64,000 nt of DNA from Thalia democratica (GCA_965202585.1 OZ241826.1:41230001-41294000); one strand, 5' to 3'. Positions 7,691 through 61,687 are shown, counted from the stretch's first letter. Program-made: numbers and translations. The notes: generated by a model not told the origin, from the sequence alone.

Positions 7691-7700
7691 ACTGGTAACT

Positions 7701-26672: not shown

Positions 26673-29600
26673 ATGTTCCTAAATTCGACAGAAGCTTCGC
26701 TTGAAGAAATTTCACTAAACATTGTTGGAGGTGGTGTGAGAAACATTGAAATAGTCCAGTATGATGACCCAACGCAGTTGGAAGGAACGTACCGTTTCAC
26801 ACAAACAGTGGAAAGAGTGTTAGATAACGGAGAAGAGATTTTTGTGAGCGAAACTGTTTGGCTTGGAAACGAACGTCTCCGTAGTATTGAAAGGCACCCT
26901 CCGGAAAATCCCCGCCTTCCATTCTGTCAAAACGACGACCATGAGTCGGAAGTTCGAACAATTAAAAAATTTTGCAGACCAGTGGTCTTTTGTAGCTATG
27001 AAGCTTATGAAAAATGTGCAAACAAGTCTTTTTCAGCTTGTGATAGCTGCAGGTTTGACTTAGTTTAGAAAATATTACAAGTTTGTTTTCGAACGGCTAT
27101 AAGGTTTATTTAAAATAAATATTAGAAAATTAAAACTAATGATGTTAACAGCAAAGGAGTTTTTTCTTTCACATTGTTTATCATACTATTACTTGGGCTG
27201 TTGATTGTTACAGGAAATTTGTCATACCTATTTTATTTATTGAAGAAAAAGAAATGCTTTTCCACGTTTTCACTACTTCAAAGTTTTTCTATTTGTGCAG
27301 ATGTTTTGACTGGTAGTACTTTACTGTTATTCATTTTTAAGTCAAAATAAACAAGTAATGTTTTTTTTTTCAGGTTTATTCGTTTTTGCTGTATTTCTTC
27401 CTAACTTTACTTCTACGTATTACGGAACTGCGACGCAATTGTTTGAATACGTCATGTTACAACGAAACAGTAGCAGTGCTAATTTTCAAGGAATATTGTT
27501 TATATTTGTTTTTCTGGCAAATTTCTATTTGTTGAAAACGATTAGCGTATTAAAATTGGTTTCAATTTGCTTTCCTTGGGTGAATATATCGAAGAAAAGG
27601 ATTTTAATACTAGCACTGGCAACTTTGATGTTTTCCTTGGCTATTCCGATCTTATTTTGTAAGTTCCTTTCAACTAAGTGGTTTTCGCTGTTCTTAATGC
27701 TGATAAAAAGTTTCACAATATACGTTTAATAATGATACAGCAAAAATATAATTAAGATAAAGTTACTTTAATCTAATTGTTCTCGAAGTACAGGTAAAAA
27801 GTTATTAAATAAACAAAGATATATAAAAATAAACTGCCGGTTTTTTTTTAATTTCGAAGGAACTTTAATTGCAAATAATAAAATTTATATTAATCTATTG
27901 TGTTGCACAGAAACAACTACTTTGTTCATATTTTTTGCATATCTTTCATATACTTTAAGATAAAAAATAATTTAGTTTATTCTTTTTAAATGTATGAATA
28001 GTTGTATACTGTATAATGATTACTGTTAGTCAGTTTATAACGCGTTTAAAACAATATCGAGCTTTTGTTATACATTACACAACCTATAATACTACAAAAC
28101 AGAAAACTTAATCAAAATAAAAAAGTTTAACTACTTTGTACAAAATTTATCTATTATGGTATTTGATTACAAACTTGTAAACAAACTTTTGCTTTTCTAA
28201 CGTGACTAGCAAATTAGAATGAATGTATAGTATAGCTTTTGACAGCGAAAGTTTACACAGAAACAACAAAAAAAAATTTAAAGTAGTTTTATATATGTAA
28301 GTAAAACTATTCATCGTTAATCAAGAAAAAATTTGTGAAATACTTTGTTAAATTTGTGTAAACACTAATTATAACTTCGATAAGAGAAAAACTAAATACA
28401 ATAACAAGTTTTTAATGCTATATTTGTAAAATAAAAATAAAAATTATTTTTACAGTAAATTTTCCAAAGGACATTCAATTTTCTTATCAATACGACTATT
28501 TCATTTTCTTTATTGAAATCCTACCGAATTCAATTGTTGTTAAAACTTCCATTTTTCTTCTACTTTTTATCGTTATAATTCCTTACGTTATTATGGTTAG
28601 TTTTATTAAATATTTTAACTTTAATATTTATCAAAGTAATCAAAAAAAAAAAAAAAATTACAAGCTTCGAATCAATAACTTACTTAACTTTTTACAATGC
28701 TAAGATTAAAACAAACAAAGTAATAATTACATAATTCCTGTAAAGTTTTATAGTTTGTAAAACAATAGTATAGCCTAACTTTATAAAATAATTTTTATAA
28801 TAATTTTAGTTTACAAATTGAGCTTAAATAATCTTTTTAAAACTTTAAAGTAGTATGTTTAAAATATTAAAGTTCTCCAAACATAAGAACATTCACGAAT
28901 TTAAGTATGTAAGTAAGTAAATTGTTAAGTATTTATATTTTATAACAAAAAAAAATGTTCAAGATACAAGTTTTGAGAAACTTTATACTAAATAAAGCTA
29001 TACTTGTTTTTAGGTTTTAGAAAACGTATACACTAATTTAACAAACATACTTTGTTATAGGCTTTTATAAACATTTGTACCATAAATAAAAACAAAATAA
29101 AAGCTGTCTAAAATTAAGTATTTTGAAATTATCATTTTAAATACTGGATTTTACGGTTTTTGAGACCAATTTAATTTAGAGTAAACTATAGTTTTTTTAT
29201 GTTTATCTAAGCAGTTTGCTTTTATTTTACTCAATTCGTAGGTACTTGCTACAATCGCATTGTACATAGTTATAAGGAACAAGTTCAAACAGTCCCGAAA
29301 ATTAACAAAACAAAGTAACAAAATAAATGCTATGGAAAGAAAAGTCGCAGTGAAAATATCACTAATGGTCTTGGCGTTCACTGTAACCACATGTTAGTCT
29401 TTGTTTGTTTATATACAAAGAGTATCTACAGATTTGATATTTTATAAATTTACAGTGCCTTTCATGATTTCTGTAATAGTTGAGAACAACAAAAAGAGTT
29501 GTGTAACTAAAACAAACCATTTGTTTAGAACTTTCTACTTGTTTTTTGCTAGAAGGTTAGTTTATAGTTTTAATTTTTTTGTTTGAATAAACATTAACAC

Positions 29601-29909
29601 CTACTTTTAAACTGAAACTTAAAAAGTATAAAAAGTTTAATTCAACTTTGGTAAATTTAAAAATATTTAAAATATTTTTTGTTAAAAAAAAATCATTTAG
29701 CTTTTTGTTTACTAAAAATTGTCGAAGTAATGTTTTAAACACTAAAAAAAACTTATGAGTTTTAAACAAATAACATGTTTGAGATTAAAAAATCTATATT
29801 GTATATTACATGTTTTATTGTTTACAGCCTTATGAATGCAGTAATATACATTGCAACCGACTCGAAATACAGGAAAACCATCAGAAAAGCACTAAAAAAA
29901 TGTTTTTAA
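26673..29909 (+). CDS. Atypical rhodopsin-like (class A) 7TM receptor, paralog 1, 432 aa, 7 exons
   Basis: Exons 26673-27052, 27152-27312, 27374-27658, 28456-28595, 29242-29392, 29456-29555, 29828-29909; all GT-AG, phases 2,1,1,0,1,2, total 1299 nt. Motifs: TM1 LLIVTGN, TM2 SICADVLTG, TM3 TISVLKLVSICFP, TM4 FSLAIP, TM5 IIPY, TM6 ERKVAVKISLMVLAFTVTTLP, TM7 LMNAVIY, helix 8 DSKYRK. Confidence 0.9.
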
Positions 29910-35460: not shown

Positions 35461-37007
35461 AGTTTTAAGTTATGTTTTTTTAATGAGTACTTCTTTTTTG
35501 TATCATCTAAAATAATTTACCACGCGTCGCTACTGTATAATAATATAAAGCAGGTTTTTCAAAATTAGTTTAAATATTAATCTCCCACTTAGTAAAAATT
35601 CAAAAAAAAATCACCGTATATTAAATACCGTTCTTTATTAGTTGATTACTCATTTACATTTTAACCCCTTATTAGTAATTGCCTACTACTGAAAGCAAAA
35701 ATTTCCCAAAAGGGTCGTATTGACAACTTTGAAAAACCGTTCTGTAGAAAACAGGACTTTGTAAACTTACTGTATATTTATATTTGCATCAATCTTTTTA
35801 AATAAGTGATCATAATTTTATCCATAAAATAGTTATGTTACTTAAGCAAGAAAGTTACCTACAAAGAAATATACGGTTTCAATAATTCAAAGTATAGAAA
35901 AAGTCTGTTGCTTAGTTAACTGAACATCTTTAAACATACTAAATTATTATTGCTAGTTACCAAAAGATTATTTTAAATTTTTTATATAACACTAAACAAA
36001 TTTGGTATTTTAAATTCAAATATGCATTTAAATGTTAAGTGTTCATTTTTGTCATTTCCGACGATAGAACTTATTTAGTTTTTGGTGCATGGTAGTTAGT
36101 CATTGTAAATCATTTCTTTAGAGTAATTTTAGTTTCAGTTTAGAAGTAGTTTATAGTAACTTTTAATTATACTTTTAAGTATATTTCGCTATATTCCTTG
36201 TTTGATCGAACAGTTGTGTTTACTAGCTAAAAGTTTCGAAAATGATTTAAGTATCATTAAGCAACGTAGAAATAAAACGCGGTAGTAATTAATGGATTAC
36301 TAAAGTAAAATAAATTAAAGCTCGGTGTAGAGCAGTGATTCTCAATTAGTTTTACTCTTCACCATAACCAAAGTATTTATTACATTTGGTATACTTGCTT
36401 ATAGTGTGAGCGTTATGATAAATCATAAATATTTTAAACTTTTTAGAAACTGATAAAATAACTAAAGTTTATATTAATTTTTTAGTTAATTTTGACAACT
36501 ATTTGTATAAAATTTAAGAAAAAATTTCAGTGCACAGAAAAAATACTGAAGCAAAATGTATTGCACACTTAGTAAATCACTATAAAAAACTTTTTTTCAT
36601 CTAGTTTTTGAGCATAGTTTAAGATATTAAAGCAACGTTTTTTAAAGTGCAACGAAGAAACAAAACTTAAACAAAACTAATAAAAACAAAATAAATTAGT
36701 GACAAAAAAATAACCAGACAGCTATAGTCTTGTATAAAAATTTAATGTGTATATATTTATCTATTTTCTTATTTGAGTTATTTTACGAAAAAAAGAAATA
36801 TTACAGTTTAGTTATAACAAGCTTTTATGAAGAATTTTACTAACTAAGTTCATACTTTGTTTTTTACAAACAATTTAGCTGATTATTAACAATTATTATT
36901 TTTAGTAAGTTGTCCGTTTTCAACTTTGCATATGAACGTGTTTTGTTTTTCGAAGTTGTCAGATAAATTTTTATCATTTTCAGTTACTTGGAACTCTTTT
37001 ACTAGAA

Positions 37008-40000
37008 ATGAGTCCTTATTTCACTGAAACTTCATTTGCCTATGCCACACCTGCAGTTTTGGTAGCAAAAGGTGGTGTTGAAAACAAAAATGTAGAACCT
37101 TGGGAAGAAAAAACAGATTTTTACGAAAAATATCCAATACGTCTTGGACAATTTTTTCAAAATTTTCTACCAGTAGCACCTGCAGATTTTATTGCTAAAA
37201 TTGAAACAAATGTAACAGAAGTACTTCGCAACAACTCTACTAATGCAACTTCTAATGAGATAAAAGTTGAAAATAACACTACTTTGAAAACTTTCACCAG
37301 CGTCAACAACGTTTATCAAGAATCGCAAAACACTCTAGGTTTTAAATTGTGCCGACCAGTAGTTTTTTGTGATTATGAAGCTTACGAAAACTGTTGGAAC
37401 AAATCTTTTTCAACTTGTGAAAACTGCAGGTAAAAATATATTTATTTTTAATTTTCAGAGTAGGTTTACTTAGTAAGATTGTAGCTTTGACAGAGGATCG
37501 TCAGCTACGTTAATTATTATTTTTTTCTTTTTGTTTATCAATCTATTTTAATTCTATCTCTGTATAGAAATTTTTTTTTTAATTCAATTTAAACTGGTCT
37601 TACCAACAGCAAAGGAGTATTTTCTTTTACATTGTTTATTATCTTACTACTTGGGGTGTTGATTGTTGTTGGAAATATGTCATACCTATTTTATCTGATG
37701 AAGAAAAAGAAAAACTTTTCGACGTTTTCTCTACTTCAGAGTTTTTCCACATGTGCTGATACTTTGACTGGTAATATTAAGTATCTTAAAAATAATCGAA
37801 TTTAACCTATACTAATAATAAGTACTTTTTGCAGGACTATTCATATTCGGTGTCTTTCTCCCTAACTTTACTTCCACGTATAATGAAACTGCGTTGCAAT
37901 TGTATAAATACTTTCAAGAACAACAAAAAAGTAGTAGTGCTTACTTTCAAGGAATATTGTTTATCTTCATTTTTCTGACTAATTTTTATTTATTGAAACT
38001 GATAAGTGTGGTAAAATTGGTAAATATTTATTTCGAATGGACAAACATATCAAAGAAAGCGATTATAATCCTAGCTTTAGCGACTTCAAGTTTTTCCTTG
38101 GCAATACCTATCTTATTCTGTTAGTCATTAGCAATTTAATTTCTTAGTAAACAAAAAAGAACGCACTTGACACTGTTTGTTATTTATATTTTGATTAAAA
38201 ATTTAATGGAACTTTTTTAATTGTAGTATACTCAGAACAACTTATTCTTAAACTATCGTAACTTTATAGTACAAGTGTATAACAATTTAGTGTATTTTAG
38301 TAGCAAGTAAAATTATAGACATTAAACTTTGAATATATTTGTTTTATTATTAAATTTCAATTTATCTAGTAAAAAAACAGTACTTTTGAAAAATTAAAAT
38401 TGCTAGCAGACATAGTTATCTAAAGTTAATTAGTATAAAGTTTGTTTTATGATACTTTTTGCAGATATCTAGTTAAGCAGTGTTAAAAGCATAGTTAAAT
38501 TTAAACTCAATTTCGTAAGTAGCTGCTGTAGACGCAATTAACTTAATAATTAGTAAGTACAATACAAAACTTAATATCTTGGGAACGGGTCACTTTTGCA
38601 CGAGCGTCACTTTTGCACGAAGGGTCACTTTTGCACGAGGGGACACTTTTGCACGGCGACTCTTTTGCACGAGCGACACTTTAGCACGAAGGGACACTTT
38701 TGCACGGCGTCACTTTTGCACGCAGGGTCACTTTTGCACGAGGGGACACTTTTGCACGGCGACTCTTTTGCACGAGCGTCACTTTAGCACGAAGGGACAC
38801 TTTTGCACGGCGTCACTTTTGCACGGAGGGTCACTTTTGCACGAAGGACACTTTTGCACGGCGTCACTTTTGCACGGTCGTCACTTTTGCATGGCGACAT
38901 TTTTACACGTCAAAACTTTTGCACGACGTTACATTTGCATGACGACATTTTTGCAAAGCGTCACTTTCGCACGGCGTTATAATTTCACGGGTATACTTAT
39001 GAACTGTAAAATTTTAAATAATCAGTCAATTTTGAACGGAACTTCACTTTTGCACGCTTCTTATTTTTTTTTCTCAAATAAAAATATGAATAGATTTTTT
39101 TTTGTCAATTTAAATAATATTCGCTTTTAAACGCAAGTTGTTTTGAATCAATAAAATGTTGTAGTGTTTTAATGAAATTTTAATGTAAAGTTTTTATGAA
39201 ACTATTGTTGCAAAAATTTATTTTACAAACTAAGTTTCGGTCTAATACCTCGTCAGTGCTTAAATAAATTTCTTAAATAAAAGTTTTTATGTTAAGTTTT
39301 ACGGACAACAATATAATTACGTACCACAATTCATTTATTCATATTTATAATCTTAATCAAAATAAACTGGAGAATAACAAACAATTTTGAATAATTTAAA
39401 TAAAAATTATCTGAATCTCGTTAAATTTTAAAGAGAAAGATAACCTTAATTTAGTAAGACTTTGAAACACGAATCTTGAGTATTATTTTTTAATAATATT
39501 CTCTTGATGTTAAAATTAGCAATATATAGTTGTTAAACAAATGGTTAAAATTTATTTCAATTTTAAACGATTGTTAAAATAAAACAAAAGATTTAGTTAA
39601 TTTTTGAATTGTAAAGGTATTTCAGATTTTACTTGACGTTTATTTTTCAGTCTATTTTTAAATTTAGCGTGAGAATATAAAGAGCAATAAAATGATTTGA
39701 ACTTGGATTATTTCAGCATTATAACTTTGCATGATCATGATAAGCCAAAGAGAAAGTAACATTTGGAAGTTTGAACTTATGTTAAAAGAAAATATACAAT
39801 ATTAGTCTTCAACTGCTGCAACATTTCAATAATAAGGCTTGGCAGAATTTTTTTTTTATCGGTCAGTTGAAATATGGAACAAACTTACAAATGAATTAGT
39901 TTCTTGCAAAAATTTTAAAGAATTTCGATTGAAGTTAAAATCTTTTTATCAAAATTATATTTGTGTTAATAAAATTAACAAGTAATTTTTATCAACCGTT

Positions 40001-47326: not shown

Positions 47327-47633
47327 TTTTGAAGGTCTACAAAAGAAAATACTTAAAAAAATAAAGTAAAATAATTTAATTAATGACGAATATTGTAAAC
47401 TTATAACGTTTATAACAGTTGTCATTTGTATTTATTATCCATAAAGTTATGTTACTTAAGCGAAACAAATAAATATTGGCAAATAAATATACGGTTTAAG
47501 TAAATGTAGAGTATTTTAAATTTTGAAAATATATAGATTGAATTTTGTTTAATTTTGTAAATAAAATGCACTTATTACTTATGGCACATACTAAGTCTAT
47601 AATATTATAGTTTTTTCAACAACAACAATAGAT

Positions 47634-47713
47634 GCTCAAAGTATTTGGAGTACAAAGAACCTTTTGATTATCGAGTCGCACACCACAGATACCTTAAACG
47701 TCTTTTCCAGGAC
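47634..47713 (+). repeat. Dispersed element, copy 5 (duplicated at 57145-57224)
   Basis: Same consensus, with a 13-nt internal deletion between two TGG trinucleotides. Confidence 0.7.
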
Positions 47714-50240
47714 ATATTACAAAAATTAAGCTTTTTTGAGTTTTATTTAACAGATATATTTAAGTTAATGTGAAGTTTTTTTTGTCACTTCCGACGATAC
47801 AAATTCTGCAAACTTTTATATTTTTAATTTAGTGCGTCTAAGTTGTTGGTTTTCAAAAATATGTCTAAAAAAAGTTTAGTTTATTAAATGTTGTAGAAGT
47901 TTAGAATTAGTTCTATAATAGCTTTTATTGTACTTTTAAGTATATCATGCCATAATATTTGTTAGATCGATGGGTTTTTTTATCAACTCAGAATAACGAA
48001 AGGTTTTTCATTATTAAAAATATTAGAAGGACACAGTGCAAACACAATCTGAGCTTAAAGTATGTTATAGTGCTGTAAATATCTTAGAGTTAAAAGTGAA
48101 TTTAATAAGCCAATAGGAATTTTTTAGTTTTATTTAAAATCGATATTATAAGAAAACATTAATATTGGCGTTTTAAATTAGTTACATAGAAAAGATTAAC
48201 AGTGTAATTGTAAGTAAGTGCTAACAGAAAAAAACTTATAAGCACAAAACCTATTTTCAATAACTTTTTTACTTAAATAAAAATAATCTACTTCTCTATT
48301 AAAAACCTAGTTTATTGAGCTTAAACGTTGTTTGAAAAACCAATTCTAAGATTGTTGATTGTTTATGCGAACTATCAAAATCAAATACTTCAGCAATACA
48401 TTGTTGAGAAATTTGTTGTTTATGCATTCTGTTATTACTAAAATGTGTTTATAAGAAATTGTTTTGTTGGTTTTTTTATTTTTGTTTTGTTTTTTAATTA
48501 TAACTATGAAGTAGTTTTTTTTTCAACAATAAAAACACTTTAAACTTTCTCGTGACTTAAAAAAAATATTTTTTCAATTTTTCCATCGAGAAAGTCAAAT
48601 GTACAGGTGTTGGTAGTTTGTCCTTAATAACATGTAATCGTGAGATGACAAAACAAACAATTAATCGACATCTATTGCGTAAAAGAACAATCTCGGCACT
48701 AATGAACATTTTTAAGGTTATTTGTTTTTGCACTTTGTTTAACTTTGTCTTAAGTCAGTATCTCATGTTGTTTAGAATTTGTAGTAATGTATTGGAACAT
48801 ATCAAGGCAGCATATAAATGTTATCTATGTTTGAGTTAGACAAACGCTAGTTTTTTGTTTTCAGAATAGTTATAAACTAACATCTTATAATAATTTTAGA
48901 TTAGACTAATAGGTTTGCTATTTAATGTTTTAATGACTAATTTTGTTTTATTTTTCGTCCCTAAAAAGCTATTAATTAATGTTAATAAAAAGCTGTTTAC
49001 AGAATAAAATTGAAAAAATTCATGAAAAACAATTCTTAAGCAGCATTTTTTTGACATTTTTGAATCATGTTTAAAAACTGTTGAGTCGTTTTATTACAAT
49101 TTACTTGTGAAGGCTTAAAAAGAAAATAATTTTAAATTTATGTTTTCAGTATGTTTCTTTATTTTTAAAAGAAGTTTTAGATTTTTCACTTGAACAACTA
49201 AAGTTAGTTGAGAGATTATGTTAGAATACGTTTCAGTAAATTTTTGTAAACAACTAAACTCTGCCGAATGTTTTTCTTTGGTATTGTAATTGTTAAGCTT
49301 GCTTAAATTTTTGTACATTTCTAAAAAAAATAGCAATAGATAATAATATTGTTACTTCTGAGTTTTCAGAGTAAGATTCAAAACAGTTTAAAGTTAAAAT
49401 TTATTTAATTCCTTTAAATTTAGTACAAAAATCGGTATCTTGTTTTAAATTTTTTAAGTAAAATATTTTGTTACATAAATATATTAAAAAAAAAATATTT
49501 ATGCGTCTTGGTATATTTTATACTTTAAGTATTCGTACGTTCGAATTTTATTAAATAACATTTAAAGACTTTATATTTACAACGGCCAAGTTAAAGAATT
49601 TTTTTAATGAGAAAAAACTTAAATTTAATATTTTCTATAAGTTATTTGAATAAGTTTTGCTTCAAATTATAATTATTTTAGACGTTTCAGAAACTGATAA
49701 AATAACTTAAGTTTAAACTTAATTTTAGTTCATTTTGACAGTTATTTGTACAATATTAAAAAAATTCAGTGCACAGAAATAATACCGAAGCAAAATATAT
49801 TGCACACTTAATAAATCACTATAAAAAAACATTTTTCTGTTAGTTTTTAAGTATAGTATAAAATATTAAACCAACTTGAGTGCAACGAAGAAATAAAACT
49901 TAATAAAAACTAATACAAACAAAATAAGTAAATAAGGAAAAAAAAAATCGGACAGCTAGAGTCTTTCTATAAAAATTTAAAGCTTAAAAATTTATCTATT
50001 ATGTTATTTGAAAATAAATTGCGAAAATAAATATTACAGTTTAGTTTTAAAAGTTTTCATGAAAAATTTTACTATCTAAGTACTTTGTTTTTTACAAACA
50101 ATTTAGCTGATTACTAACAAATCAACTATTATTTTTAGTAAGTTGTCCGTTTTCAGCTTCGCATATGAACATATTTTGTTTTTTTAAGTTTTCAGATAAA
50201 TTTTAACAACTTCAGTTACTTGAAAACTCTTTTATCAGAA

Positions 50241-53123
50241 ATGAGTCCTTATTCCACTGAAACTTCATTTGCCACACCTGCAATTTTAGTAGCAAAAGGT
50301 GGTGTTGAAAACGTAGAACCTTGGGGAGAAAAGACATATTTAAATATAAAACAACCAACAAATCCTGAATTATTTTTTCAAAACTCTGTACCATTCGCAC
50401 CTGCGGATTTTATTGCTAAAATTAAAATAAATGTAACAGAAGTACTTCGCAACAACTCTACTAATGCAACTTCTAATGAGATAAAAGTTGAAAACTTTCA
50501 CCAGCGTCAACAACGTTTATCAGGAATCGCAAAACACTCTAGGTTTTAAATTGTGCCGACCAGTAGTTTTTTGTGATTATGAAGCTTACGAAAATTGTTG
50601 GAACGAATCTTTTTCAACTTGTGAAAACTGCAGGTAAAAATATATTTATTTTTAATTTTCAGAGTAGGTTTACTTAGTAAGATTGTAGCTTTGATAGAGG
50701 ATCGTCAGCTACGTTATTTATTTATTTTTCTTTTTGTTTATCAATCTATTTTAATTCTATCTCTGTTTCAATTTTTTTTCAAATTTAATTTAAACTGGTC
50801 TTACCAACAGCAAAGGAGTATTTTCTTTCACATTGTTTATTATCTTATTACTCGGGGTGTTGAATGTTGTTGGAAATATGTCATACCTAATTTATCTGAT
50901 GAAGAAAAAGAAAAACTTTTCGACGTTTTCTCTACTTCAGAGTTTTTCCGCATGTGCAGATACTTTGACTGGTAATATTAAGTATCTTAAAAATAATCGA
51001 ATTTAACCTATACTAATAATAAGTACTTTTTGCAGGACTATTCATATTCGGTGTCTTTCTCCCTAACTTTACTTCCACGTATAATGAAACTGCGTTGCAA
51101 TTGTATAAACACTTTCAAGAACAACAAAAAAGTAGTAGTGCTTACTTTCAAGGAATATTGTTTATCTTTATTTTTCTGACTAATTTTTATTTATTGAAAC
51201 TAATAAGTGTGGTAAAATTGGTAAATATTTATTTCGAATGGACAAACATATCAAAGAAAGCGATTATAATCCTAGCTTTAGCGACTTCAAGTTTTTCCTT
51301 GGCAATACCTATCTTATTTTGTTAGTGGTTAGCAATTTAATTTCTTAGTAAACAAAAAACAACGTACTTGACACTGTTTGTTATTTATATTTTGATTAAA
51401 AATTTAATGGAACTTTTTTAATTGTAGTATACTCAGAACAATTCATTCTTAAACTAACGTAACTTTATAGTACAAGTGTACAACAATTTAGTGTATTTTA
51501 GTAGCAAGTAAAATTGTAGACATTAAATTTTGAATATATTTGTTTTATTATTAAATTTCAATTTATCTAGTAAAAAAACAGTACTTTTAAAAAATTAAAA
51601 TTGCTAGCAGATATAGTTATCTAAAGTAAATTTGTATAAAGTTTGTTTTATGATACTTTTTGGAGATATCTAGTTAAGCAGTGTTAAAAGCATAGTTAAA
51701 TTTAAACTCAATTCTGAAGTAGCTGCTGTAGACGCAATTAACTTAATAATTAGTAAGTACAATACAAAATTTAACATCTTAGTTAACATAAAGGAATAAA
51801 AATATAAACTTTACAGCATTCTTTCCACATTCCATTCAGTTTACATATCAATTTGACATTTTCATATTCTGGATAGAAGTTTTACCAAATTCCCAAGTGA
51901 AAAACATTTATTTCATTATTCTATTTTTAACTGTCATAATTCCTTATATGATTATGGTTAGTTTGTAAAAACTACTACCTTCTCTACAACATATACTTTT
52001 ATTTTTATAAACTATCTTTTTAGTTTTTTAACTCTACTAACTTTAAATTTTTCATTTTAACTTCAAAATTTAAATGAACAAAAAACTATCAGCTTAATGA
52101 ATAATTATTTAATTGAAAAAAAAAAAACTTATATTTAGTTTAAAGTTTTAGTAAAAATTTGATTAGGCTCAAAAGGCTATTTACTTTTAAAACAGAGTTT
52201 TTTAAAATAAATGTGTTACAAAACTATTCAGTAAGTGTGAAAAATTTCTTTAAAATTCATTCTTTAAATTTTATTCAGATAAAAAAGTATATTAAGTACA
52301 ACAAACTCCTATGAAAATTTATTGTCTATTTAGTTGTGTACTGAAGTAGATCAATGTTTTTTTAATTATTAATCTAAGGTATTGGCAACTATTGGAGTCT
52401 ACTTAGTTGTAAGGCACAAATTCAAAAGTTCACAAAAACTGACAAAGCAAACTAAATTAATAAATGCTATGGAAAGAAAAGTTGCATTAAAAATATCATT
52501 AATGGTTGTTGCTTTTTCTGTAACTACACGTTAGTCTTTAATGGTCTGTCTGTAACAGTGTATACTCTGAAATGTGTTTTAATTTACAGTACCTTTCATG
52601 ATTTCAGTAATAGTTGAACACAACAAAGGTGGATGCATAACAAAAACAAACCACGTGTTTGTGACGTTTTACTTATTTTTCGCCAGAAGGTTGGTTTGCA
52701 CTTTTTCTTTCGATTAGTATTTTGTGTTTTTAGTTCTCATATATATTAAATGCTTAACTTTAGTATAAAACAGTATTTTATTTTAGAATACTAGTTGAAT
52801 AATTTCAAAAAAATTAATTTAATTATAAATAATGTTATTAAGGTATTTACAAATATATGAAGCAAATAGATATTTTGTTTATTATATAATATTATTTAAC
52901 AGTTTATTCGACAAATAGTTTTAAAAAACTTGGCATATTTAATATAGAATATTTTAGTAAAATATCAGTTTGTTAAACCCAATGCTTTCTACGTGATATG
53001 CAGTTTTTTATTTTAATATATGTAATTATTTTTTTCAGCCTCATGAATGCAGTAATATACATTGCAACAGACTCGAAGTACAGGAAGTTCATAAGAAAGT
53101 TTTTCAGATATTTATTCAACTAA
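50241..53123 (+). pseudogene. 7TM receptor paralog 3, frameshifted in exon 1
   Basis: Exons 50241-50633, 50811-50971, 51036-51320, 51817-51956, 52379-52529, 52590-52689, 53039-53123. Exon 1 is 393 nt (phase 0 instead of 2) because of a 17-nt deletion at 50494/50495; premature TAA at 50547-50549. Exons 2-7 and all splice sites are intact. Confidence 0.85.
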
Positions 53124-55320
53124 ATTTGTAACTTGACGCATTACAAAATAAACAACATTTTCAAACAAACTCAACAAAATTTTTTTAGTTTGTATCAACT
53201 TGTTTCAATTTATGCAAGATATGTATTAGAAAAAAATGCAGATCAAAAGTATACTTTTTTTCGTATGTCTTGAATAGCAAATATCTGCAAAACTAACTTT
53301 TGAAACTTAAAATATTAAAGTAAAGAGAAATTAAAACTATTAGAACAAAAAAAATCATTTCAATTTTGTAGTATTAAAGTAGACTCAAATATATTGTATA
53401 AAACAGATATAGTATAAATCAGGCATAGAAAGTGTTAATCTAATTAAATACAATATATACTAACTATCAACTTAGTTAAAACAGAAATAGAAACATCAAT
53501 TAAGTATACACATAAGTTATGTTTTTAACTAAAGTAGCTTGTGAACGATTTCAATCATTAACTATTCATCAGCTACTTTATTTTATTCCAAGTTGTTGTT
53601 TAAATTTGATTTTTTTTTCATTAGATTTTAGAAAAGTTTCTAGTATTTGACTTTTTAAAATATATAGTAGGTTATAGTTATGTTGTTTTTTATTAAATAT
53701 GTTTTAAATAAAAGTTAAGTTAAAGTTATATATATATTTTAGTTCAAATGTTACTAAATAAGATTCTTAGTACATCATTAAAAACAAAATTCAGTTAATT
53801 TTCGTTTAGTTTTATTTTCTTCGTTTAACAATTGTTTTTTTACTAAAAATTTAAATATTTTAATGATAAAAAAACTATGTGTAACAGCTCGTAAGAAACT
53901 TTATAAGCATGTGGTGTACGACTCGATAACCAAAAGGTTCCTTTACTCACCAGGTCCTACGACCAAACTTTTTGAGCGCTTTTTTATCGTTCAATAAACA
54001 ATTATTTATCAAAATAACAAATAAATTTATTATTCATAATAGGTATAAATATTATGAGACTTTTAGATACAAGTAGGATTTTTTATAATTGAGTAACTTT
54101 AAAAGTTTCAAAAAAAAAAACAATTAAACATTTTTAATAAGTTTTTTTTGTCAAAATTCTATTTTTTAATGTTTTACTTAATCTTAATTTATTGTTCTCT
54201 TAATAGGCTTTTCCTTAAAATTAATTAGTATTTGTTTATTTTTTGCTTTATGTTAATTGTTTTTTTTTTGAAAAGAGTTTGTAATAGTTGTCCAATTAAG
54301 TTTAATTTGGATTTTAGCATAAAATTTTATTAATGCCTTTGAAAATATATTATAGACTAAGGCTGATTATATATGTTATAACGTTGTTCCTATGTTTAAA
54401 TGTTTATAATACATATGTTTTAAAGTTTTTAGTTATAAATTATACAATTATATGTTATTTTTTTGTGTTTACTAATCAAATGGCCTTGTTTTTAATGCTT
54501 AGAATAGAAATTCATAACAAGTTAAAATAATTATAGTTATAATACCTATAACAAAAATTTTTTTTTGATATAAGAAGAAAAAAATAATAAAAAAGATTAT
54601 TTTATAAAAGAATGTTCCTAAACTAAATGTAAATTAATAATCTAGATAAACAAGCTTAAGTTCTTCCTAACAAAAATTACAAGTTGGTTAAAACAAAAAA
54701 GTTGTAAATTAAAAAAAAACAATGTGTGATATTAATTGAATTAAACGTTAAGATTTGTTGTATAAGTAAAAATAAATCGACCTTTTAATTATTCATATAA
54801 ATTATCATTAATTAATACTTTATATAATTTAGTTATGGTAAAACGATATGATGCATGAAAATGCCTTTCGGTTAGCGAACCACACAACGTTTATTTACTA
54901 TAAATTTGTTTATTTTTTATAGTATTTTAGCTATAAATAAGAAGAGCATACAAATATTGTTAATTTTTTCTAAATAGATAAGTTTTTGTGTTTTAATAGT
55001 AATAATAATATTTATAATATTTTGATGACAATATTAATAAATAATAATAATATTTGTAAATTATGTTAAGTAAGCTTAACTTAAAATATTAAATACATGA
55101 AAACATGTTTTTTAGTCGCTCGTTTTATGAAAACTGTTTTTTTTTCCAATTGAATACTTTACGATCATGAAATTTAAAGTATATAATTAATGAAGAAAAC
55201 TATAAACTTTATTTAAAAATGACATAAAACTGTCAAACAATAACAGAAACTAATAGTTTTCTCATACATTGCTAAATTGCTAACAATATATAATTAAGAA
55301 AATCTACTATAATATTAAAA

Positions 55321-55458
55321 ATCACAGTTTACGTAGTTGTAAGGACAAAGTTTAAAGATTCGTTAAAACTCATAAAACAAAGTATTATAATTAACGCCGT
55401 AAAAAGAAAAGTGGCAATAAAAATGTCATTAGTAGTTGTGGCTAACCATGTGATTAGT
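55321..55458 (+). pseudogene. Orphan relic of receptor exon 5 in unit B2
   Basis: ITVYVVVRTKFKDSLKLIKQSIIINAVKRKVAIKMSLVVVANHVIS. Confidence 0.72.
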
Positions 55459-58400
55459 GTCAAAAAAAATAAATATATTATAAAACTATAAAAACATCCG
55501 GTATCGATTTTTTATTTTTCAGATTTTTTTTATACTAATAAATTGTAGTAGTAGCCTAATATACCTACTATAAATGATTATAAAAGACAAACTGAATTAT
55601 ATCTGATTGAAAGCTCTAAAACTAAATTATGCTTAATATTTTAATTTAACTTTTAATTATATATTTTCGTTTACAACGGTTTAACTATCTATTAGTTTGC
55701 ATTTAAATATGTTCTGAAATTGTAAATTATACTGAATAAAAATAAATCGTACGTAATAGATCTTTTTACTAAATAAAATTAGGAGTTATAAAAACTTTAT
55801 TGGTTAGGAAAGTATTAATAGTGCAGATACTAAAAACTATTTTTTAGACAAAAGTTTTTTTTTATATAAAAACCTATTACGTATGAAAACTAAATAATAG
55901 AGAAAACTAACTACTATTACACAGTGTGTTAGGGTATGTACTTAGCTGTACATTTATTACATCGTTTGTAGAGAAATTAATGTATAATAAAAGTTTGTAC
56001 CTTTATGGTTCAAAGAAATATTTTAAAAATTTATCTAACATTTAAAGCTGTTAGAAAGAAAATTTTATTATCAATGTTTAATACGTATTTATTACATTTG
56101 TTCAAACAGACAATTAAAATCAAATTAAAAATCAATAAACTACCACGATAAACAAGCTAATATAAAAAAGAAAAAATTCAAACTGCAATAACGTTTACAT
56201 AGTTTGATTTTGTTTTAGTTTTGTTATTGTAAGACTTTATTATTTAACATAAAGACAGTTTAAGCTTTAAAGTAAATTAATGAACAAATTGTACCTCATG
56301 ACAATTTAAATACTAGCTACATTTTTTTTGCTAGCATTTTACTTTTACAACGCATATCGGTAGGAAGGGGTTTTAGTAGATTCATATAATTTCTTTAAGT
56401 AGTTGTAACTTATATTATTTGGCTAGTTCAAATTAAAATAAAAAGTGGTAGCTTCGAAAATTGTTACAAACATGCGTAAAACTTTAGATTTAGTATTGAG
56501 GGGACGAATAGAATAATTTTACCTAGTTTATATTTTTTTTAATTATAAGTTAACCGAGTAAAGTTTTAAATAATAATTTTAAATATTTTTCGCTTTAATT
56601 AATAAAAAATATCGTACACACTACATATTAAATTATTATGCGGATTTTCTCTCAAACAAATTTAAGTTTTTAATAAAAACACATAATGTTTTTTTTTTAC
56701 TTATTGTTTTACTAGGATGTAGTTAAGTTAACGTTACGCTCAAGTACGCTCAAAATATTCGGTCGCACGAAGAATCTTACGGTTTTCGAGACGCACATCT
56801 TGTTTGGTACCTTTAAATGTTTTGTTCAGGACTTTTGTAGGTCTACAAAAGAAAATGCTTAGAAAAATAAAGTGAAAGAATTAAATTTATGACGAATATT
56901 GTAAACTTTTAACGATTATAAAAATTGTCATTTTTATTTATTCTCCATAAAGTTATAGTACTTAAGCGAAAAAATTAATTATTGGCAAATAAATATATGG
57001 TTTAATTACATGTAGGGTATTTTTAAATTTTCAAAATAAATGGACTAAATTTTGTTAATTTTTTTAAATAAAATGTACTTTTTACTTATAGCACATATTC
57101 ATCTAGTTTCTAATATTATAGCTTGTTCAACAACAACAATAGATGCTCAAATTATTTGGTGCACAAAGAACCTTTTGATTATCGAGTCGCACACCACAAA
57201 TACCTTAAACGTCTTTTCCAGGACATACAAAAAAATAAAACTTTATATTTAACAGATATATATATAAATTAATGTGAAGTTTTTTTTGTCACTTCCGACG
57301 ATACAATTTCTGCAGACTTTTATTTTTTAAATTTAGTTCGTAAAAGCTGTTAGTTTTTAAAAAGATGCCTAAAAATAGATTAGTTTATTAAATGTTTTTG
57401 AGGTTTAGAAATAGTTTTTTAATAGATTTTATTGTATTTTTAAGTATATCATGCCATAATCTTTGTTTGATCGATGGGTTTTATTAACAACTCAGAATAA
57501 CCGAAGATTTTTCATTATTAACTATGAATATTAAAAATTATTAGAACGACATTGTGCAAAGAAAATTTGAGCTTAGAGTACGTTACAGTGCTGTAATTAT
57601 CTTAGAGTTAAAAGTGAATAAAATAGGCCAATAAGATTTTTTTAGTTTTCTTAAAAACCGATATCATAAGAAAACATTAATGTCGTCGTTTTAAATAAGT
57701 TCACAAAAAAATTACCAGTTTAGTTTTAAGTAAGTGCTAACAGAAAAATCTTATAAGCACAAAACCTTTTTTAATAACTTTTCAACAACTTTTTTACTTT
57801 AATAAAAAGAATCACTTCACTTATAAAACGCTAGTTTATTGAGCTTAAAAGTTGTTTGAAAAACCAATTCTAAGATTGTTGGTTGTTTATGCAAGCTATC
57901 AAAATTAAATACTTTAGCAATACATTGTAAAGAAATTTGTTTTTTAATGCATTTTGTTGATCCCCAAATATTTTTCGAATAAATTGTTTAGTTGTTTTGT
58001 TTTGTTTTTAAATTATAACTATCAAGTATTTTTTATTCAACTATAAAAATATTTTCTTCTTGCCTGTGAATTAAAACTTATTTGTTTTTAAAGTTTTCAT
58101 CGAGAAAATCACATGTACGTACAGGTATTAGTAGTTTGTCCTTAATAACATGTAGTCGTGAGATGACAAAACTAACGGTTAATCGACATTTATCGCGTAA
58201 AAAAAAATTAACAATCTCGTCACTAACAAACATTTTTTAAGGTTATTTTTTTTTGCACTTTGTTCGACCTTGTCTTAAGTTTGTTTCCCATTTTGTTAAA
58301 AACTTGTAAAAACGTATAAGTATATATCAACGCAGCAAATAACTGTTATCAGTGTTTTAGATAGACAAACGCTAGGTTTTTGGTTTCTGAATAGTTACAA

Positions 58401-59383
58401 ACTAATATCTTATAATAATTTTATATTAGACTACTAGGTTTGCTATTTAATTTTTAATAACTGCTTTTGTTTTTTTTTTTAATAGTTTTCAAGTAATTAG
58501 TTTATAATTTATTAGGTAAAATTAAGATAATTTTTTTTATCGAAATGGCAAATAAATAAAGCTTTTACACAGTATAATTGTAAAAAACCCTGGCAAAAAG
58601 TTCTTAAGCAGCAGTTTTTTGAATTTTTTTAATCATCTTTAAAAAGCTGTTTAGTCGTTTTACTACAATTTACTTGTGAAGGCTTTAAAAGAAAACAAAG
58701 TGTTTTTAAAGTAATATTTTCAATTGAATTCTATATTTTAAAAAGAAGCTTTAGATTTTTCACTTGAATGATTAAAGATAGTTGAGAGATTATGTTAGAC
58801 AACGCTTCAGTAAATTTTTGTAAACATTTATACTCTGCCGAATGTTTTTCTTTGGTATTGTAATTGTTAAGCTTGCTTAGATTTTTCTATAATTAAAAAA
58901 AAAAAGCATTACATAATATGAATGTTATTTCTGAGTTTTTAGAGCATGATTCAAAACATTTCAAAGTTAAAATTTATTTAATTTCTATAAATTTTGTACA
59001 AAAATGTATATCTTGGTAAACATTTCTTTGAGTAAAGTTTTTTGTTGTACAAAAATAGTTTTAAAAAACATTAATATACGTCTTGGTTTACTTTATACTT
59101 TAAGTATTCGTACTTTAGTAATTTATCAAATAGCATTTTATAACTTATACTTACGAGGGTATTTTTAAGTACTTTTTAATGAAAAAAGTCTTAAATTTTA
59201 GTTTTTCTATGAGATTTTTCAATAAGTCTTGCTTTAACCCGAACTGCTAAAATTAATTAATTTTTAATCAAATTCTAAATTAAGTTGTAATTTACTAAGC
59301 TTGCGATTAAACAAACAATCGAGAAATGTAGTTTTTTTTTAGATTTAACCTAATTTCTTCACTCAAATTCAAACTATACCGGT

Positions 59384-61687
59384 ATGACAAAAATATTTCC
59401 GAGAAATTTTACAGAAAAAGATTTTCAAAACAAAAGAAACGAAATTGTTGGTAAACCAGAAAAGGCGGGTGTATACTACGTTAGAAATTTCTATCAAGTT
59501 TCACAAAATAAATCGGATTACAATTTGTGCAGACCGATAGTTTTCTGTGAATATGAAGCTTATGAAAAGTGCGCAAACAAATCTTTTTCAACTTGTGAAA
59601 GCTGCAGGTGGTATTAAATAGTTTGAAGTAACAAAATGTGTAAAATTTAATTTTAATAAGAAAATCAAACTTTAAATATAATTGTCTGAGACTATAACTT
59701 GAAGAAAATAAAATTTGCTTTTAATTACCTTCATAGATCATTTTAAAATTTTTGAATTTAAAAATTTAAAGTTAAATAGTTAAACATTGTTACCTACAGC
59801 AAGGGAACATTTGCATTTACGTTATTTATCATACTGTTACTTGGAACATTGATTGTAGTAGGAAACGTGTCATACTTGCTCTACTTGCTCAAGAAAAAGA
59901 AACACTTTTCGCCTTTTTCACTGCTTCAGTGTTTCTCCACATCTGCGGATATTTTGACAGGTAATGTTTTATACAAAGTTTTCAATTTTTTTTTACGTAA
60001 ACAAACTTTAAATAACAGGTTTTTTTATATTCACCGTATTTGTTCCTAGCTTCATCATTACTTATAATGGAACTGGGTCGGAATTGTTAAGTTTTGTCAA
60101 AAATCAACAACAAAGCAACAGTGCTAAACTTCGAGGAATGCTGTTTGTTTTTGTCTTTCTGGCAAACTTTTATTTGTTGAAATTGATCAGTGTGGTAAAG
60201 TTGCTCACAATTCGCTTTGAGTGGATAAATATGTCAAAGAAAAGAGTTGTAGTACTGGCTTTGGCAACTTTGGCATTTTCCTTGGCTATACCGGTCTTGT
60301 TTTGTAAGTTATAATCGTAAGTTTTCTAAAAATTGTTCTTTTTTTTTCAAAAGTTACAAACTTATAGTTAAACCATGGTACAACAGTCAGACTAAATTAA
60401 AAGACTTTATTTGTTTATTTTTCTTCTTAAGATTTGAGTATATACTCTTGTTTTTATTTGACAGTATAATTTGTGTTTCTCTACAGTACTTTTTCCAAAT
60501 TCAATTCGATTTTCATATCAATACGACTTTTTTATTTTCTGGTTTGAAATTCTACCGAATTCAAATGTTGAAGTTATTTCTCTTATGGTTTCAATTTTCA
60601 TAGTGATGATTCCCTACGTAATAATGGTTAGAGCTTTAACACTTCTTTTTATTAAAAAACTTATTTATTTAAAATTTATAAACAATCTCCTTTAACATTT
60701 CTTTATTTTTACCAACTTATTTCTATAAAAAAAAAAACAGCTATATTCCAAAATACTAAGTAAAATATATGTCAAGCACGTTTTAGCTGAAAATTTTAAC
60801 CAGCGCTACCTACACGGTATCATATAATAAACTTTAAAGACATGTTGATAATGTTTAGTTCTTTAGGTTTTGAAAAATGTTTTGGCCTCTGGTTGTTTCT
60901 AAATAACTTGTTGTATTTACTTATTTTTACTCAATATGCAGGTATTTGCCACAATTGGAGTTTACGCAGTTGTTCGGCACAAGTTCAAAAACTCTAGAAA
61001 ACTTTCAAACCAAGTAAATATAATAAACAAAATGGAAAAAAGAATCGCAATCAAAATATCTTTACTGGTTGTAGCGTTTTCAGTAACTACATGTTAGTTT
61101 ATTTATTGCTCGACATAACACACTTTATATTATATTTTTATATAACAGTGCCATTTGTGATCACTGTACTAGTTGAAAACAGCAAGGAAAGTTGTGACAC
61201 AAGAGCAAACCATATGTTTGTGACGTTCTACATATTTTTCTCTAGAAGGTCGGTTTACTGTATTTAATTTTTTTTTAATCCAACGTAAATTAAATTAAGT
61301 ATTAAGACTTGTGCTAACTGTACAAGCATCACAACAAAAAGTTGTTGTGTTTTACATTATTTAAACTTAAGTTTTCGATTATGGCAATGCTTATTTCAAA
61401 TAAAAATTAAGTAATTCTTAACTACAAAAATTTCAACAACTATAAGCTGAAAAATACTAAGTAAAAGTAGTTGTAAAACTAACTTTAGAATGATTTTTTA
61501 ATATAAGTTAAACTTTCTAAAGTTTGTTCAAATCATGTCAAAATTAACGCTTAAAATAACCATTAATTTTAATTACAGCCTTGTGAATGCTGGAATATAC
61601 ATTGCAACTGACTGGAAGTACAGAAAGTCCATCCAAAAAAGTTTAAAGAAATTGTTTATTTTAAACCATCAACTATTTAACGTTTAA
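59384..61687 (+). CDS. Atypical rhodopsin-like 7TM receptor, paralog 4, 389 aa, 7 exons
   Basis: Exons 59384-59607, 59800-59960, 60019-60303, 60487-60626, 60942-61092, 61149-61248, 61579-61687; 1170 nt, same phases. An in-frame stop upstream of the ATG supports this start. TM7 reads LVNAGIY. Confidence 0.9.

What the first reader, a model, noticed from the sequence alone, without database searches (positions are those of the whole stretch)
26673..61687. Hidden tandem family of four atypical 7TM receptors: constant TM core, variable ectodomain
The ORF track shows only fragments. Manual splicing gives four 7-exon genes with identical internal exon lengths (161/285/140/151/100) and intron phases (seen). 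The TM core carries class A GPCR landmarks (GN in TM1, AD in TM2, P in TM5 and TM6, N..IY plus helix 8; established knowledge). All copies add a shared 5-Cys cap, lack several canonical motifs and have strongly divergent N-termini. The cluster shows birth-and-death: a recent ~10-kb duplication, one pseudogene and orphan exon relics. Inference: a lineage-specific recognition repertoire (chemosensory, immune or allorecognition) that may be undescribed.
Basis: partly seen in the sequence, partly recalled or inferred. Interest (0 to 1): 0.85.

Follow-up and report, generated by a model that had tools for sequence, protein, structure and literature searches.

The report
Tandem divergent GPCR-like genes, pelagic tunicate
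Four neighbouring, spliced genes (three intact, one probably broken) of a very AT-rich marine planktonic animal, probably a salp, encode a previously unannotated and very divergent branch of rhodopsin-type seven-helix receptors with a constant membrane core, a five-cysteine cap and a variable outer tail; this is a lineage-specific receptor expansion of a familiar kind, and its function is unknown.

Summary
On the + strand lie four 7-exon genes. Their internal exons are 161/285/140/151/100 nt in every copy, all with AG..GT borders and open frames. Marine metatranscriptome contigs join all six predicted junctions of gene 4 exactly.

Genes 1, 2 and 4 encode 432, 447 and 389 aa. Gene 3 has a 17-nt deletion in exon 1 and is probably a pseudogene. 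A ~9.6-kb unit (gene 2 to gene 3) is duplicated at ~90% identity, and three orphan exon-5 relics exist.

The 306-aa core aligns without gaps and is under purifying selection (omega 0.15-0.25). The N-terminus is variable, apart from a C-x5-C-x7-C-x7-C-x2-C cap.

Assignment to class A GPCRs is probable but not proven. Topology and motif spacing fit, but every database match is below threshold. The full-length spliced proteins could not be given to Pfam or AlphaFold.

Protein libraries of 5.8 and 1.8 billion sequences hold no annotated relative, only a few ocean-metagenome fragments.

The chemosensory, immune or allorecognition reading is untested. Earlier notes on this thing all come from this same window; the scan has not reported it on other DNA.

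The parts
26673..29909 (+). Gene 1, intact, 432 aa. Exons 26673-27052, 27152-27312, 27374-27658, 28456-28595, 29242-29392, 29456-29555, 29828-29909.
   Evidence: All borders are GT..AG. The frame is open from ATG to TAA.
37008..42643 (+). Gene 2, intact, 447 aa. Exons 37008-37429, 37610-37770, 37835-38119, 41349-41488, 41902-42052, 42113-42212, 42559-42643. Intron 3 is enlarged to 3229 nt by an insertion.
50241..53123 (+). Gene 3, probable pseudogene. Exon 1 (50241-50633) is frameshifted by a 17-nt deletion relative to gene 2. Exons 2-7 are intact: 50811-50971, 51036-51320, 51817-51956, 52379-52529, 52590-52689, 53039-53123.
   Evidence: Of 12 polarisable core amino-acid differences from gene 2, 9 are derived in gene 3.
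59384..61687 (+). Gene 4, intact, 389 aa. Exons 59384-59607, 59800-59960, 60019-60303, 60487-60626, 60942-61092, 61149-61248, 61579-61687.
   Evidence: All six junctions are joined in RNA contigs of runs X6 and X7.
26973..27050 (+). Five-cysteine juxtamembrane cap of gene 1 (C-x5-C-x7-C-x7-C-x2-C). The same cap lies at 37350-37427 (gene 2), 50554-50631 (gene 3) and 59528-59605 (gene 4).
   Evidence: Also present in metagenome relative L001:260-340.
44803..44958 (+). Orphan exon-5-like relic 1.
   Evidence: tblastn, E about 1e-10. Aligned.
45625..45774 (+). Orphan exon-5-like relic 2. It is a local 0.8-kb tandem copy of relic 1.
55309..55464 (+). Orphan exon-5-like relic 3, the counterpart of relics 1 and 2 in the second duplication unit.
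36420..49664 (.). First copy of the tandem segmental duplication: gene 2, relics and spacer.
   Evidence: Self-blastn blocks 36420-38580, 41304-45600 and 46637-49665 match the second copy at 90.3, 91.2 and 81.3%.
49664..59237 (.). Second copy of the tandem segmental duplication (gene 3, relic and spacer), about 9.6 kb.
38580..41304 (.). A 2.7-kb insertion in intron 3 of gene 2, absent from gene 3. It is bounded by inverted minisatellite arrays of 51-52-nt period.

Best explanation
The locus is a small tandem cluster of a lineage-restricted, highly divergent subfamily of rhodopsin-type (class A-like) seven-helix receptors. The host is a very AT-rich marine planktonic animal, probably a salp.

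Shown:
- The four genes share one 7-exon structure.
- Gene 4, or a ~95% identical relative in the sea, is transcribed and spliced exactly as predicted.
- The membrane core is conserved under purifying selection.
- The N-terminal tail varies in length and sequence.
- The cluster grows and decays by segmental duplication, frameshift and exon loss.

Inferred:
- Each protein sits in the plasma membrane with the N-terminus outside.
- The five cap cysteines plus the single conserved ECL3 cysteine form three disulfides. One of them staples the cap to ECL3 and takes the place of the missing TM3-ECL2 disulfide.
- Ligand specificity lies mainly in the variable N-terminal tail, ECL1, the top of TM5 and ECL3. 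This points to a peptide, protein or surface-bound ligand rather than a small molecule held in a variable helical pocket.
- The signal passes to a G protein or arrestin through a modified switch set: K instead of R at 3.50 with P seven residues on, F6.44/P6.50, and N7.49/Y7.53.
For: Gene structure: one search gives four hits per exon length with no false hits. Searches give complete models.

Transcription: one search shows contigs from two metatranscriptome runs joining 59607|59800, 59960|60019, 60303|60487, 60626|60942, 61092|61149 and 61248|61579, all GT..AG. Their coding differences are 20 synonymous to 12 non-synonymous.

Constraint: core dN/dS is 0.15-0.25 at dS 0.9-1.4 between genes 1, 2 and 4.

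Topology:
- Six strong hydrophobic segments plus a weaker TM7.
- K+R counts of 4, 2-4, 6 and 6 on the predicted inside loops and tail, against 1, 1 and 1 on the outside loops.
- N-glycosylation sequons and the Cys cap on the outside.

Class A register:
- GN in TM1 lies 28 residues before AD in TM2.
- The V-K-L triplet is followed by P at +7 in gene 1 and in P0002, P0003 and P0005.
- P0003 and P0005 carry R at that site.
- P0005 carries W ten residues before the TM4 proline.

Database leads, all pointing to the same clan:
- Exon 2 matches 7TM_GPCR_Srsx positions 5-38, E 0.0036.
- P0005 was found with the exon 3 profile at E 3.5e-4 in 1.8 billion proteins and matches 7tm_1 positions 61-120 at E 6.4e-5.
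- The only solved structures hit by the TM1-TM4 profile are GPR52 chains, colinear, E 0.42.
- Atlas features for P0002 score 0.95 to 7tm_1 clusters, ten of ten in one clan, with structural TM-scores of 0.61-0.65 to opsin-type and olfactory receptors.
- Exon 5 scores 0.85 to Srw/7tm_1 clusters.

Where the core varies: only 32% of ECL1, 41% of TM5 and 43% of ECL3 positions are invariant, against 64-83% in TM1-4, TM6 and TM7.
Against: - No match reaches a curated or significant threshold.
- P0002 (TM1-TM4 of a relative, 191 aa) gives no 7tm_1 hit at all.
- Exon 3 alone is not recognised by the Atlas.
- Profiles of exons 2, 4 and 5 find no GPCR in the PDB.
- The AlphaFold model of P0002 is poor (pLDDT 64.6, pTM 0.45) and Foldseek finds nothing at E below 0.78.
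- Several class A signatures are absent: DRY is V-K-L, W4.50 is L, CWxP is T-T-L-P, NPxxY is N-A-x-I-Y, there is no Tyr eight residues after the TM5 proline, and there is no TM3-ECL2 disulfide. G-protein coupling is therefore uncertain.
- Similarity to nematode Srw/Srsx families may partly reflect shared AT-rich, Phe/Ile/Leu/Lys-rich composition.
- RNA support comes from environmental contigs 3-10% different from the window and covers gene 4 only.
Confidence: 0.72

Rival explanations
1. The proteins have the GPCR fold but no longer signal through G proteins. They would act as atypical or scavenger receptors, adhesion or recognition molecules, or constitutively active or self-occluded receptors. 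In the last case the conserved aromatic ECL2 and the cap plug the pocket, and the variable tail only modulates activity.
For: All four copies replace D/E-R-Y, the TM6 toggle Trp and the TM7 Pro. ECL2 is unusually conserved for an outer loop (60% invariant) and very aromatic. The only solved-structure hit is GPR52, a receptor known from the literature to be activated by its own ECL2; that knowledge comes from memory and was not tested here.
Against: A positive charge is kept at 3.50. More distant family members keep Arg. N7.49, Y7.53, D2.50 and a basic helix 8 are retained and constrained. Many working class A receptors lack one or more of these motifs.
Confidence: 0.15
2. The family is an independent 7TM family that only mimics class A landmarks by chance and composition. 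It would belong to another superfamily, for example cAMP-receptor-like, TPRA1-like or an unknown one.
For: All sequence matches are below threshold. The Atlas structure list for P0002 also holds a class B2 adhesion receptor cluster (TM 0.65) and TPRA1 (TM 0.52). Foldseek on the AF2 model finds nothing.
Against: Independent pieces (exon 2, exon 5, P0002, P0005) all point to the same clan and in the right register. Spacings agree with class A numbering: N1.50 to D2.50, 3.50 to the ICL2 proline, W4.50 to P4.60 in P0005, F6.44 to P6.50, and N7.49 to Y7.53.
Confidence: 0.08
3. The cluster is a decaying remnant without present function: transcribed pseudogenes.
For: One copy is frameshifted, three exon relics lie nearby, and a mobile-element-like insertion sits in an intron.
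Against: Three copies have complete open frames across seven exons with intact splice sites. Core omega is 0.15-0.25 at saturated dS. Variants among expressed environmental relatives are mostly synonymous. Splicing is precise.
Confidence: 0.03

Closest known systems
Ciona 'Other Rhodopsins' and 'Unclassified Rhodopsins' (Kamesh et al. 2008, PMC2396169)
   Same: They are rhodopsin-family receptors of a tunicate with no reliable orthologue in other phyla. That paper interprets them as lineage-specific or fast-evolving genes of unknown function.
   Different: No Ciona protein was recovered by the exon 3 profile at E up to 0.001 in a 1.8-billion-protein library, so no orthology is shown.
GPR52 (class A orphan; PDB 8hmp, 9ijr, 6li3)
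   Same: It is the only solved structure hit by the TM1-TM4 profile. It aligns colinearly from the TM1 G-N through the end of TM3 to TM4.
   Different: The E-value of 0.42 is not significant. GPR52 has D-R-Y, and no cap or variable ectodomain was compared. This is a register check, not a relationship.
Nematode serpentine chemoreceptor families Srsx and Srw (Pfam clan GPCR_A)
   Same: They give the best Pfam hit for exon 2 (Srsx, E 0.0036) and the best Atlas feature hits for exon 5 and P0002. They are tandemly duplicating, intron-containing, AT-rich-coded class A-like receptors.
   Different: The hits are below Pfam's threshold, and composition bias is a likely contributor. Nematode families number tens to hundreds of genes and lack the Cys cap. 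Here variation sits in the ectodomain.
Chemokine-type class A receptors (N-terminus to ECL3 disulfide); from established knowledge, not tested here
   Same: There is an odd cysteine count in the N-terminal segment plus one conserved ECL3 cysteine. The N-terminal tail is the likely first ligand contact.
   Different: Chemokine receptors keep the TM3-ECL2 disulfide, DRY, CWxP and NPxxY, and are mostly single-exon. No sequence similarity was detected.
Lipid and melanocortin receptors of the MECA cluster (S1P, LPA, cannabinoid, MC); from established knowledge, not tested here
   Same: They are class A receptors that lack the canonical TM3-ECL2 disulfide. In S1P1, LPA1 and CB1 a structured N-terminal cap lies over the pocket.
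   Different: No sequence match was found. Their caps are helical and not five-cysteine knots, and their N-termini are not hypervariable between paralogues.

Membership tests
Rhodopsin-type (class A) GPCR, Pfam clan GPCR_A / PF00001 7tm_1 | Seven membrane helices with the N-terminus outside and the C-terminus inside | tested here: met
   A hydropathy scan finds six strong segments plus a weaker TM7. Positive charges cluster on ICL1, ICL2, ICL3 and the tail. Sequons and the Cys cap are on the outside. This is prediction only.
Rhodopsin-type (class A) GPCR, Pfam clan GPCR_A / PF00001 7tm_1 | Significant match of the protein to a clan profile (Pfam gathering score) | tested here: inconclusive
   Only separate exons and fragments could be scanned. 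Exon 2 matches Srsx at 17.2 bits against a 24.1 cut-off. P0005 matches 7tm_1 at 23 bits against 30.5. P0002 gives no hit. The full-length spliced proteins were not scanned because they have no reference.
Rhodopsin-type (class A) GPCR, Pfam clan GPCR_A / PF00001 7tm_1 | Signature residues at canonical spacing: N1.50, D2.50, basic 3.50 with ICL2 Pro at +7, P4.60, P5.50, F6.44/P6.50, N7.49/Y7.53 | tested here: met
   Read from the gapless alignment and from fragments P0002, P0003 and P0005. N to D is 28 residues, the same as in rhodopsin and the beta-2 adrenoceptor (those numbers are from memory).
Rhodopsin-type (class A) GPCR, Pfam clan GPCR_A / PF00001 7tm_1 | Full microswitch motifs: D/E-R-Y, W4.50, C-W-x-P, N-P-x-x-Y, Y5.58 | tested here: not met
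   They read V-K-L, L, T-T-L-P, N-A-x-I-Y and T in all four copies. These motifs are typical of the family but are not required for membership.
Rhodopsin-type (class A) GPCR, Pfam clan GPCR_A / PF00001 7tm_1 | Conserved disulfide between the top of TM3 and ECL2 | tested here: not met
   There is no cysteine in ECL1, the start of TM3 or ECL2 in any copy or in L001. Some class A groups also lack this disulfide.
Rhodopsin-type (class A) GPCR, Pfam clan GPCR_A / PF00001 7tm_1 | GPCR fold in a structure model | tested here: inconclusive
   The Atlas model of P0002 (pTM 0.53) matches 7tm_1 clusters at TM 0.61-0.65. My AF2 model of P0002 is poor, and Foldseek finds nothing significant. No full-length model was possible.
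Rhodopsin-type (class A) GPCR, Pfam clan GPCR_A / PF00001 7tm_1 | Coupling to heterotrimeric G proteins | not testable with these tools
   This needs a cell-based assay.
Chemosensory receptor repertoire (as in vertebrate OR or nematode Sr families) | Large family, with variation concentrated in the helical ligand pocket and expression in sensory cells | tested here: inconclusive
   There are only three intact genes here plus a few metagenome fragments. Variation is in the N-terminus, ECL1, upper TM5 and ECL3. Genome-wide copy number and expression site were not testable.

The most novel reading that the evidence does not exclude
These genes are members of a thaliacean- or tunicate-specific receptor family that fills the gap left by the loss of all vertebrate-type, insect-type and nematode-type chemoreceptors in tunicates (PMC7776563). 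They would act as chemosensory or self/non-self recognition receptors, with specificity carried by a fast-evolving ectodomain held on a disulfide-stapled cap.
Probability: 0.15. Interest if true: 0.75.

Novelty: new variant of a known kind. Interest (0 to 1): 0.42.

Why it matters
Tunicates, the closest relatives of vertebrates, lack orthologues of OR, TAAR, V1R and V2R genes and of insect and nematode chemoreceptors. Which receptors they use to sense chemicals is an open question (PMC7776563).

An expressed, constrained, tandemly duplicating receptor family that standard profiles miss is a concrete candidate to test. It also shows that ORF-based and profile-based annotation will overlook such genes in AT-rich, intron-rich genomes.

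Structurally, a class A-like core that swaps the canonical TM3-ECL2 disulfide for a five-cysteine cap plus an ECL3 cysteine would be an unusual way of building the extracellular lid.

Against this, lineage-specific orphan rhodopsin-type expansions are common in invertebrates. This cluster is small, and nothing yet ties it to any function.

Tried and rejected
- **Pfam on each exon of gene 4 and on three exon 1 peptides.** Only a sub-threshold Srsx hit for exon 2; no domain in the ectodomains.
- **Pfam on metagenome fragments P0001-P0005.** Only P0005 touches 7tm_1, below threshold.
- **Exhaustive HMMER with the exon 3 profile against 1.84 billion representatives.** Five hits, all short ORF fragments. 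One (P0004) is a repeat artefact. No full-length or annotated protein was found.
- **Word-indexed searches with P0002, P0005 and the exon 3 profile against 5.8 billion clusters.** Each found only itself or P0001. A 'length ladder' to reach full-length GPCRs therefore failed.
- **JGI metagenome scan with the exon 3 profile.** No relative found.
- **PDB profile searches with exons 2, 4 and 5.** Nothing meaningful.
- **Atlas search with exon 3 alone.** Not recognised.
- **AF2 on P0002 with a 12-row alignment.** Low confidence, and Foldseek against the PDB was not significant.
- **Rfam on the whole window.** Nothing.
- The full-length spliced proteins exist only in my scratch files and have no reference. 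I did not type them into Pfam, PDB, Atlas or AlphaFold calls, so those steps were not done.
- **Rejected reading: chance ORFs or a dead array.** Rejected on splicing, constraint and intact frames.
- **Rejected reading: insect-type 7TM channel topology.** Rejected on the positive-inside pattern.


Full report
**Setting**

The window is very AT-rich: 20-31% G+C over most of its length and 22-31% across the locus. It contains no N. Contigs that carry close or distant relatives of the genes all come from ocean plankton metagenomes, including Tara Oceans assemblies. The RNA runs that hold exon 3 are marine metatranscriptomes. Earlier notes of this scan on other windows of the same genome call it a pelagic tunicate, most likely the salp Thalia democratica. 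I did not test that. It is consistent with what I saw, and I use it only as context.

**Observation**

I built gene 4 by hand from the sequence. I then scanned both strands of the whole window for AG-[L]-GT stretches of 161, 285, 140, 151 and 100 nt that are open in the required phase and resemble gene 4. The scan returned exactly four hits for each exon, all on the + strand and in the same order, with no spurious hit.

- Exon 1 donors and last-exon acceptors were found the same way.
- The stops were fixed at 29909, 42643, 53123 and 61687.
- Genes 1, 2 and 4 give open frames of 432, 447 and 389 aa.
- Intron lengths differ freely (56 to 3229 nt), while exon lengths and phases are fixed.
- tblastn of the three proteins against the window finds no further copy before 26.6 kb or after 61.7 kb. 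It does find three isolated exon-5-like pieces at 44803-44958, 45625-45774 and 55309-55464.

**Transcription**

Contigs of two marine metatranscriptome runs (X6, X7) lie on gene 4 exons only. They join all six predicted junctions at the predicted bases: 59607|59800, 59960|60019, 60303|60487, 60626|60942, 61092|61149 and 61248|61579, each skipping a GT..AG intron. Several have long sides (87-156 nt). The DNA run X1 covers exons and introns alike.

The RNA contigs differ from the window by about 3-10%, so they come from a related population, species or paralogue. Of the 32 listed coding differences, 20 are synonymous and 12 are not. That is the pattern of a constrained gene. Genes 1-3 were not checked with reads, because only one call was allowed.

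**Evolution of the cluster**

The core, from the exon 1/2 junction to helix 8, aligns over 306 residues without a gap.

| Comparison | Core amino-acid identity | dS | dN/dS |
|---|---|---|---|
| Among genes 1, 2 and 4 | 66-74% | 0.9-1.4 | 0.15-0.25 |
| Gene 2 vs gene 3 | 95% | 0.095 | 0.23 |

Self-comparison shows one tandem segmental duplication, 36420-49664 against 49664-59237, in three blocks of 90.3, 91.2 and 81.3% identity. The first copy carries two extras:
- a 2.7-kb insertion in intron 3 of gene 2 (38580-41304), bounded by inverted arrays of a 51-52-nt repeat;
- a 0.8-kb local duplication that doubled the exon 5 relic.

Gene 3 exon 1 differs from gene 2 by deletions of 6, 6 and 17 nt. 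Its 393 nt are in the wrong phase, and both frames contain stops. Of 12 core amino-acid differences between genes 2 and 3 that can be polarised with genes 1 and 4, nine are derived in gene 3. One is an Ile-to-Asn change beside the TM1 G-N. Gene 3 is therefore probably a young pseudogene, subject to confirmation of the deletion by reads.

In exon 1, genes 2 and 3 differ almost only by non-synonymous changes, clustered at residues 37-56. This confirms the 'hypervariable patch' noted earlier. It cannot distinguish positive selection from decay of gene 3 or a micro-conversion.

**The protein**

The N-terminus starts with a short conserved stretch holding an N-x-T sequon and has no evident signal peptide. 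A variable stretch of 47, 99 or 113 residues follows. It ends in an invariant-pattern cap, C-x5-C-x7-C-x7-C-x2-C, only a few residues before TM1.

A relative that is only about 38% identical, on metagenome contig L001, has the same cap, the same exon layout and the same ECL3 cysteine. The family is therefore older and wider than this cluster.

Hydropathy gives six strong segments and a weaker seventh. Lys and Arg cluster on the predicted inner loops and tail (4, 2-4, 6, 6) against 1, 1 and 1 outside. This indicates the N-terminus is outside.

No cysteine exists in ECL1, the start of TM3 or ECL2, so the canonical class A disulfide is absent. The five cap cysteines plus the single conserved ECL3 cysteine make an even six. 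I infer three disulfides, one linking the cap to ECL3. This is not shown.

Within the core, the least conserved parts are ECL1 (32% invariant among genes 1, 2 and 4), upper TM5 (41%) and ECL3 (43%). TM1 is 83% invariant, and the aromatic ECL2 is 60%. Variation therefore lies on the outer face and above all in the tail. This suggests a large or surface-bound ligand rather than a small molecule in a variable helical pocket.

**Is it a class A GPCR?**

*Evidence in favour: the register of landmarks.*
- G-N in TM1 lies 28 residues before A-D in TM2.
- V-K-L sits at the end of TM3, with a Pro at +7 in gene 1 and in fragments P0002, P0003 and P0005.
- Pro is present in TM4 and TM5.
- F-x5-P is present in TM6, and N-A-x-I-Y in TM7.
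- An aromatic residue lies seven positions later in a basic helix 8.
- The distant fragments P0003 and P0005 have Arg where the window genes have Lys.
- P0005 has Trp ten residues before the TM4 proline, that is W4.50 and P4.60.

*Evidence in favour: database matches that converge on one clan, none significant.*
- Exon 2 matches Srsx, E 0.0036, in register.
- P0005 was recovered by the exon 3 profile at E 3.5e-4 in 1.84 billion proteins and matches 7tm_1 positions 61-120 at E 6.4e-5.
- GPR52 is the only solved structure hit by a TM1-TM4 profile, colinear, E 0.42.
- Atlas features for P0002 score 0.95 to 7tm_1 clusters, with structural TM-scores of 0.61-0.65 to opsin-type and olfactory receptors.
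- Exon 5 scores 0.85 to Srw/7tm_1 clusters.

*Evidence against.*
- P0002 gets no 7tm_1 hit.
- Exon 3 alone is unrecognised by the Atlas.
- Short-exon PDB searches are empty.
- My AF2 model of P0002 is poor, and Foldseek finds nothing.

The spliced full-length proteins have no reference and were not typed in, so the decisive HMM and fold tests remain to be done. I put the class A-like fold at about 0.85 and the whole explanation at 0.72.

**Novelty and comparison**

No annotated relative was found:
- five fragments in 1.84 billion representatives;
- only self or P0001 in 5.8 billion clusters;
- nothing in JGI metagenomes.

This partly reflects the absence of salp proteomes from these libraries. 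Lineage-specific rhodopsin-type receptors without orthologues are a recognised category in tunicates: Ciona has 23 'Other Rhodopsins' among 116 rhodopsin-family members (PMC2396169).

Tunicates lack OR, TAAR, V1R and V2R orthologues and insect or nematode chemoreceptor homologues, and their chemoreceptors are unknown. In salps the oral lips and ciliated funnel are the suspected chemosensory sites (PMC7776563). That makes this family a reasonable candidate. But three intact genes, no expression site and no ligand make the chemosensory, immune or allorecognition reading a hypothesis only.

**Verdict**

This is a real, expressed, constrained and previously unannotated divergent class A-like receptor family in a small birth-and-death cluster. 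It is a new variant of a known kind and of moderate interest.

Noticed in passing
window 30-3470 (+): A single uninterrupted 1146-aa ORF, rich in Ser, Cys, Lys and Glu, sits in a stretch of higher G+C (0.39 against about 0.25 elsewhere). It has no Pfam domain. It may be a single-exon gene for a low-complexity Cys-rich protein.
   Followed up: partly
window 38580-41304: A 2.7-kb insertion is specific to intron 3 of gene 2. It is bounded by inverted arrays of a 51-52-nt (17-nt sub-unit) tandem repeat at 38587-38977 and 40850-41295. Its architecture resembles a foldback element.
   Followed up: partly
window 32178-32588 (+): A 136-aa ORF between genes 1 and 2 looks like the C-terminal tail of a non-LTR retrotransposon ORF2. 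Pfam gives no hit.
   Followed up: partly
window 3446-6235 vs 7700-10434; 14712-15379: Upstream of the receptor cluster there is a 2.8-kb direct duplication at 82.6% identity and a tandem array with a period of about 68 nt.
   Followed up: no
window 20796-21108, 43231-43529, 53709-54005: A roughly 310-nt interspersed repeat (84-88% identity) is present upstream of the cluster and once in each duplication unit.
   Followed up: no
L001:137-2624 (ENA ERZ27291330 contig k119_242290): An ocean-metagenome contig (26% G+C) carries a ~38% identical family member with the same Cys cap and exon layout. Its intron 2 is 54 nt, in frame and stop-free, so exons 2 and 3 were called as one 191-aa ORF (P0002). 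No exon 5 was detected between its exons 4 and 6.
   Followed up: partly
window 37116-37175 vs 50337-50396: Genes 2 and 3 are about 93% identical in exon 1, except for a roughly 20-codon patch where nearly every codon differs, often at several bases. This looks more like a clustered replacement (micro-conversion or template switch) than independent point changes.
   Followed up: partly
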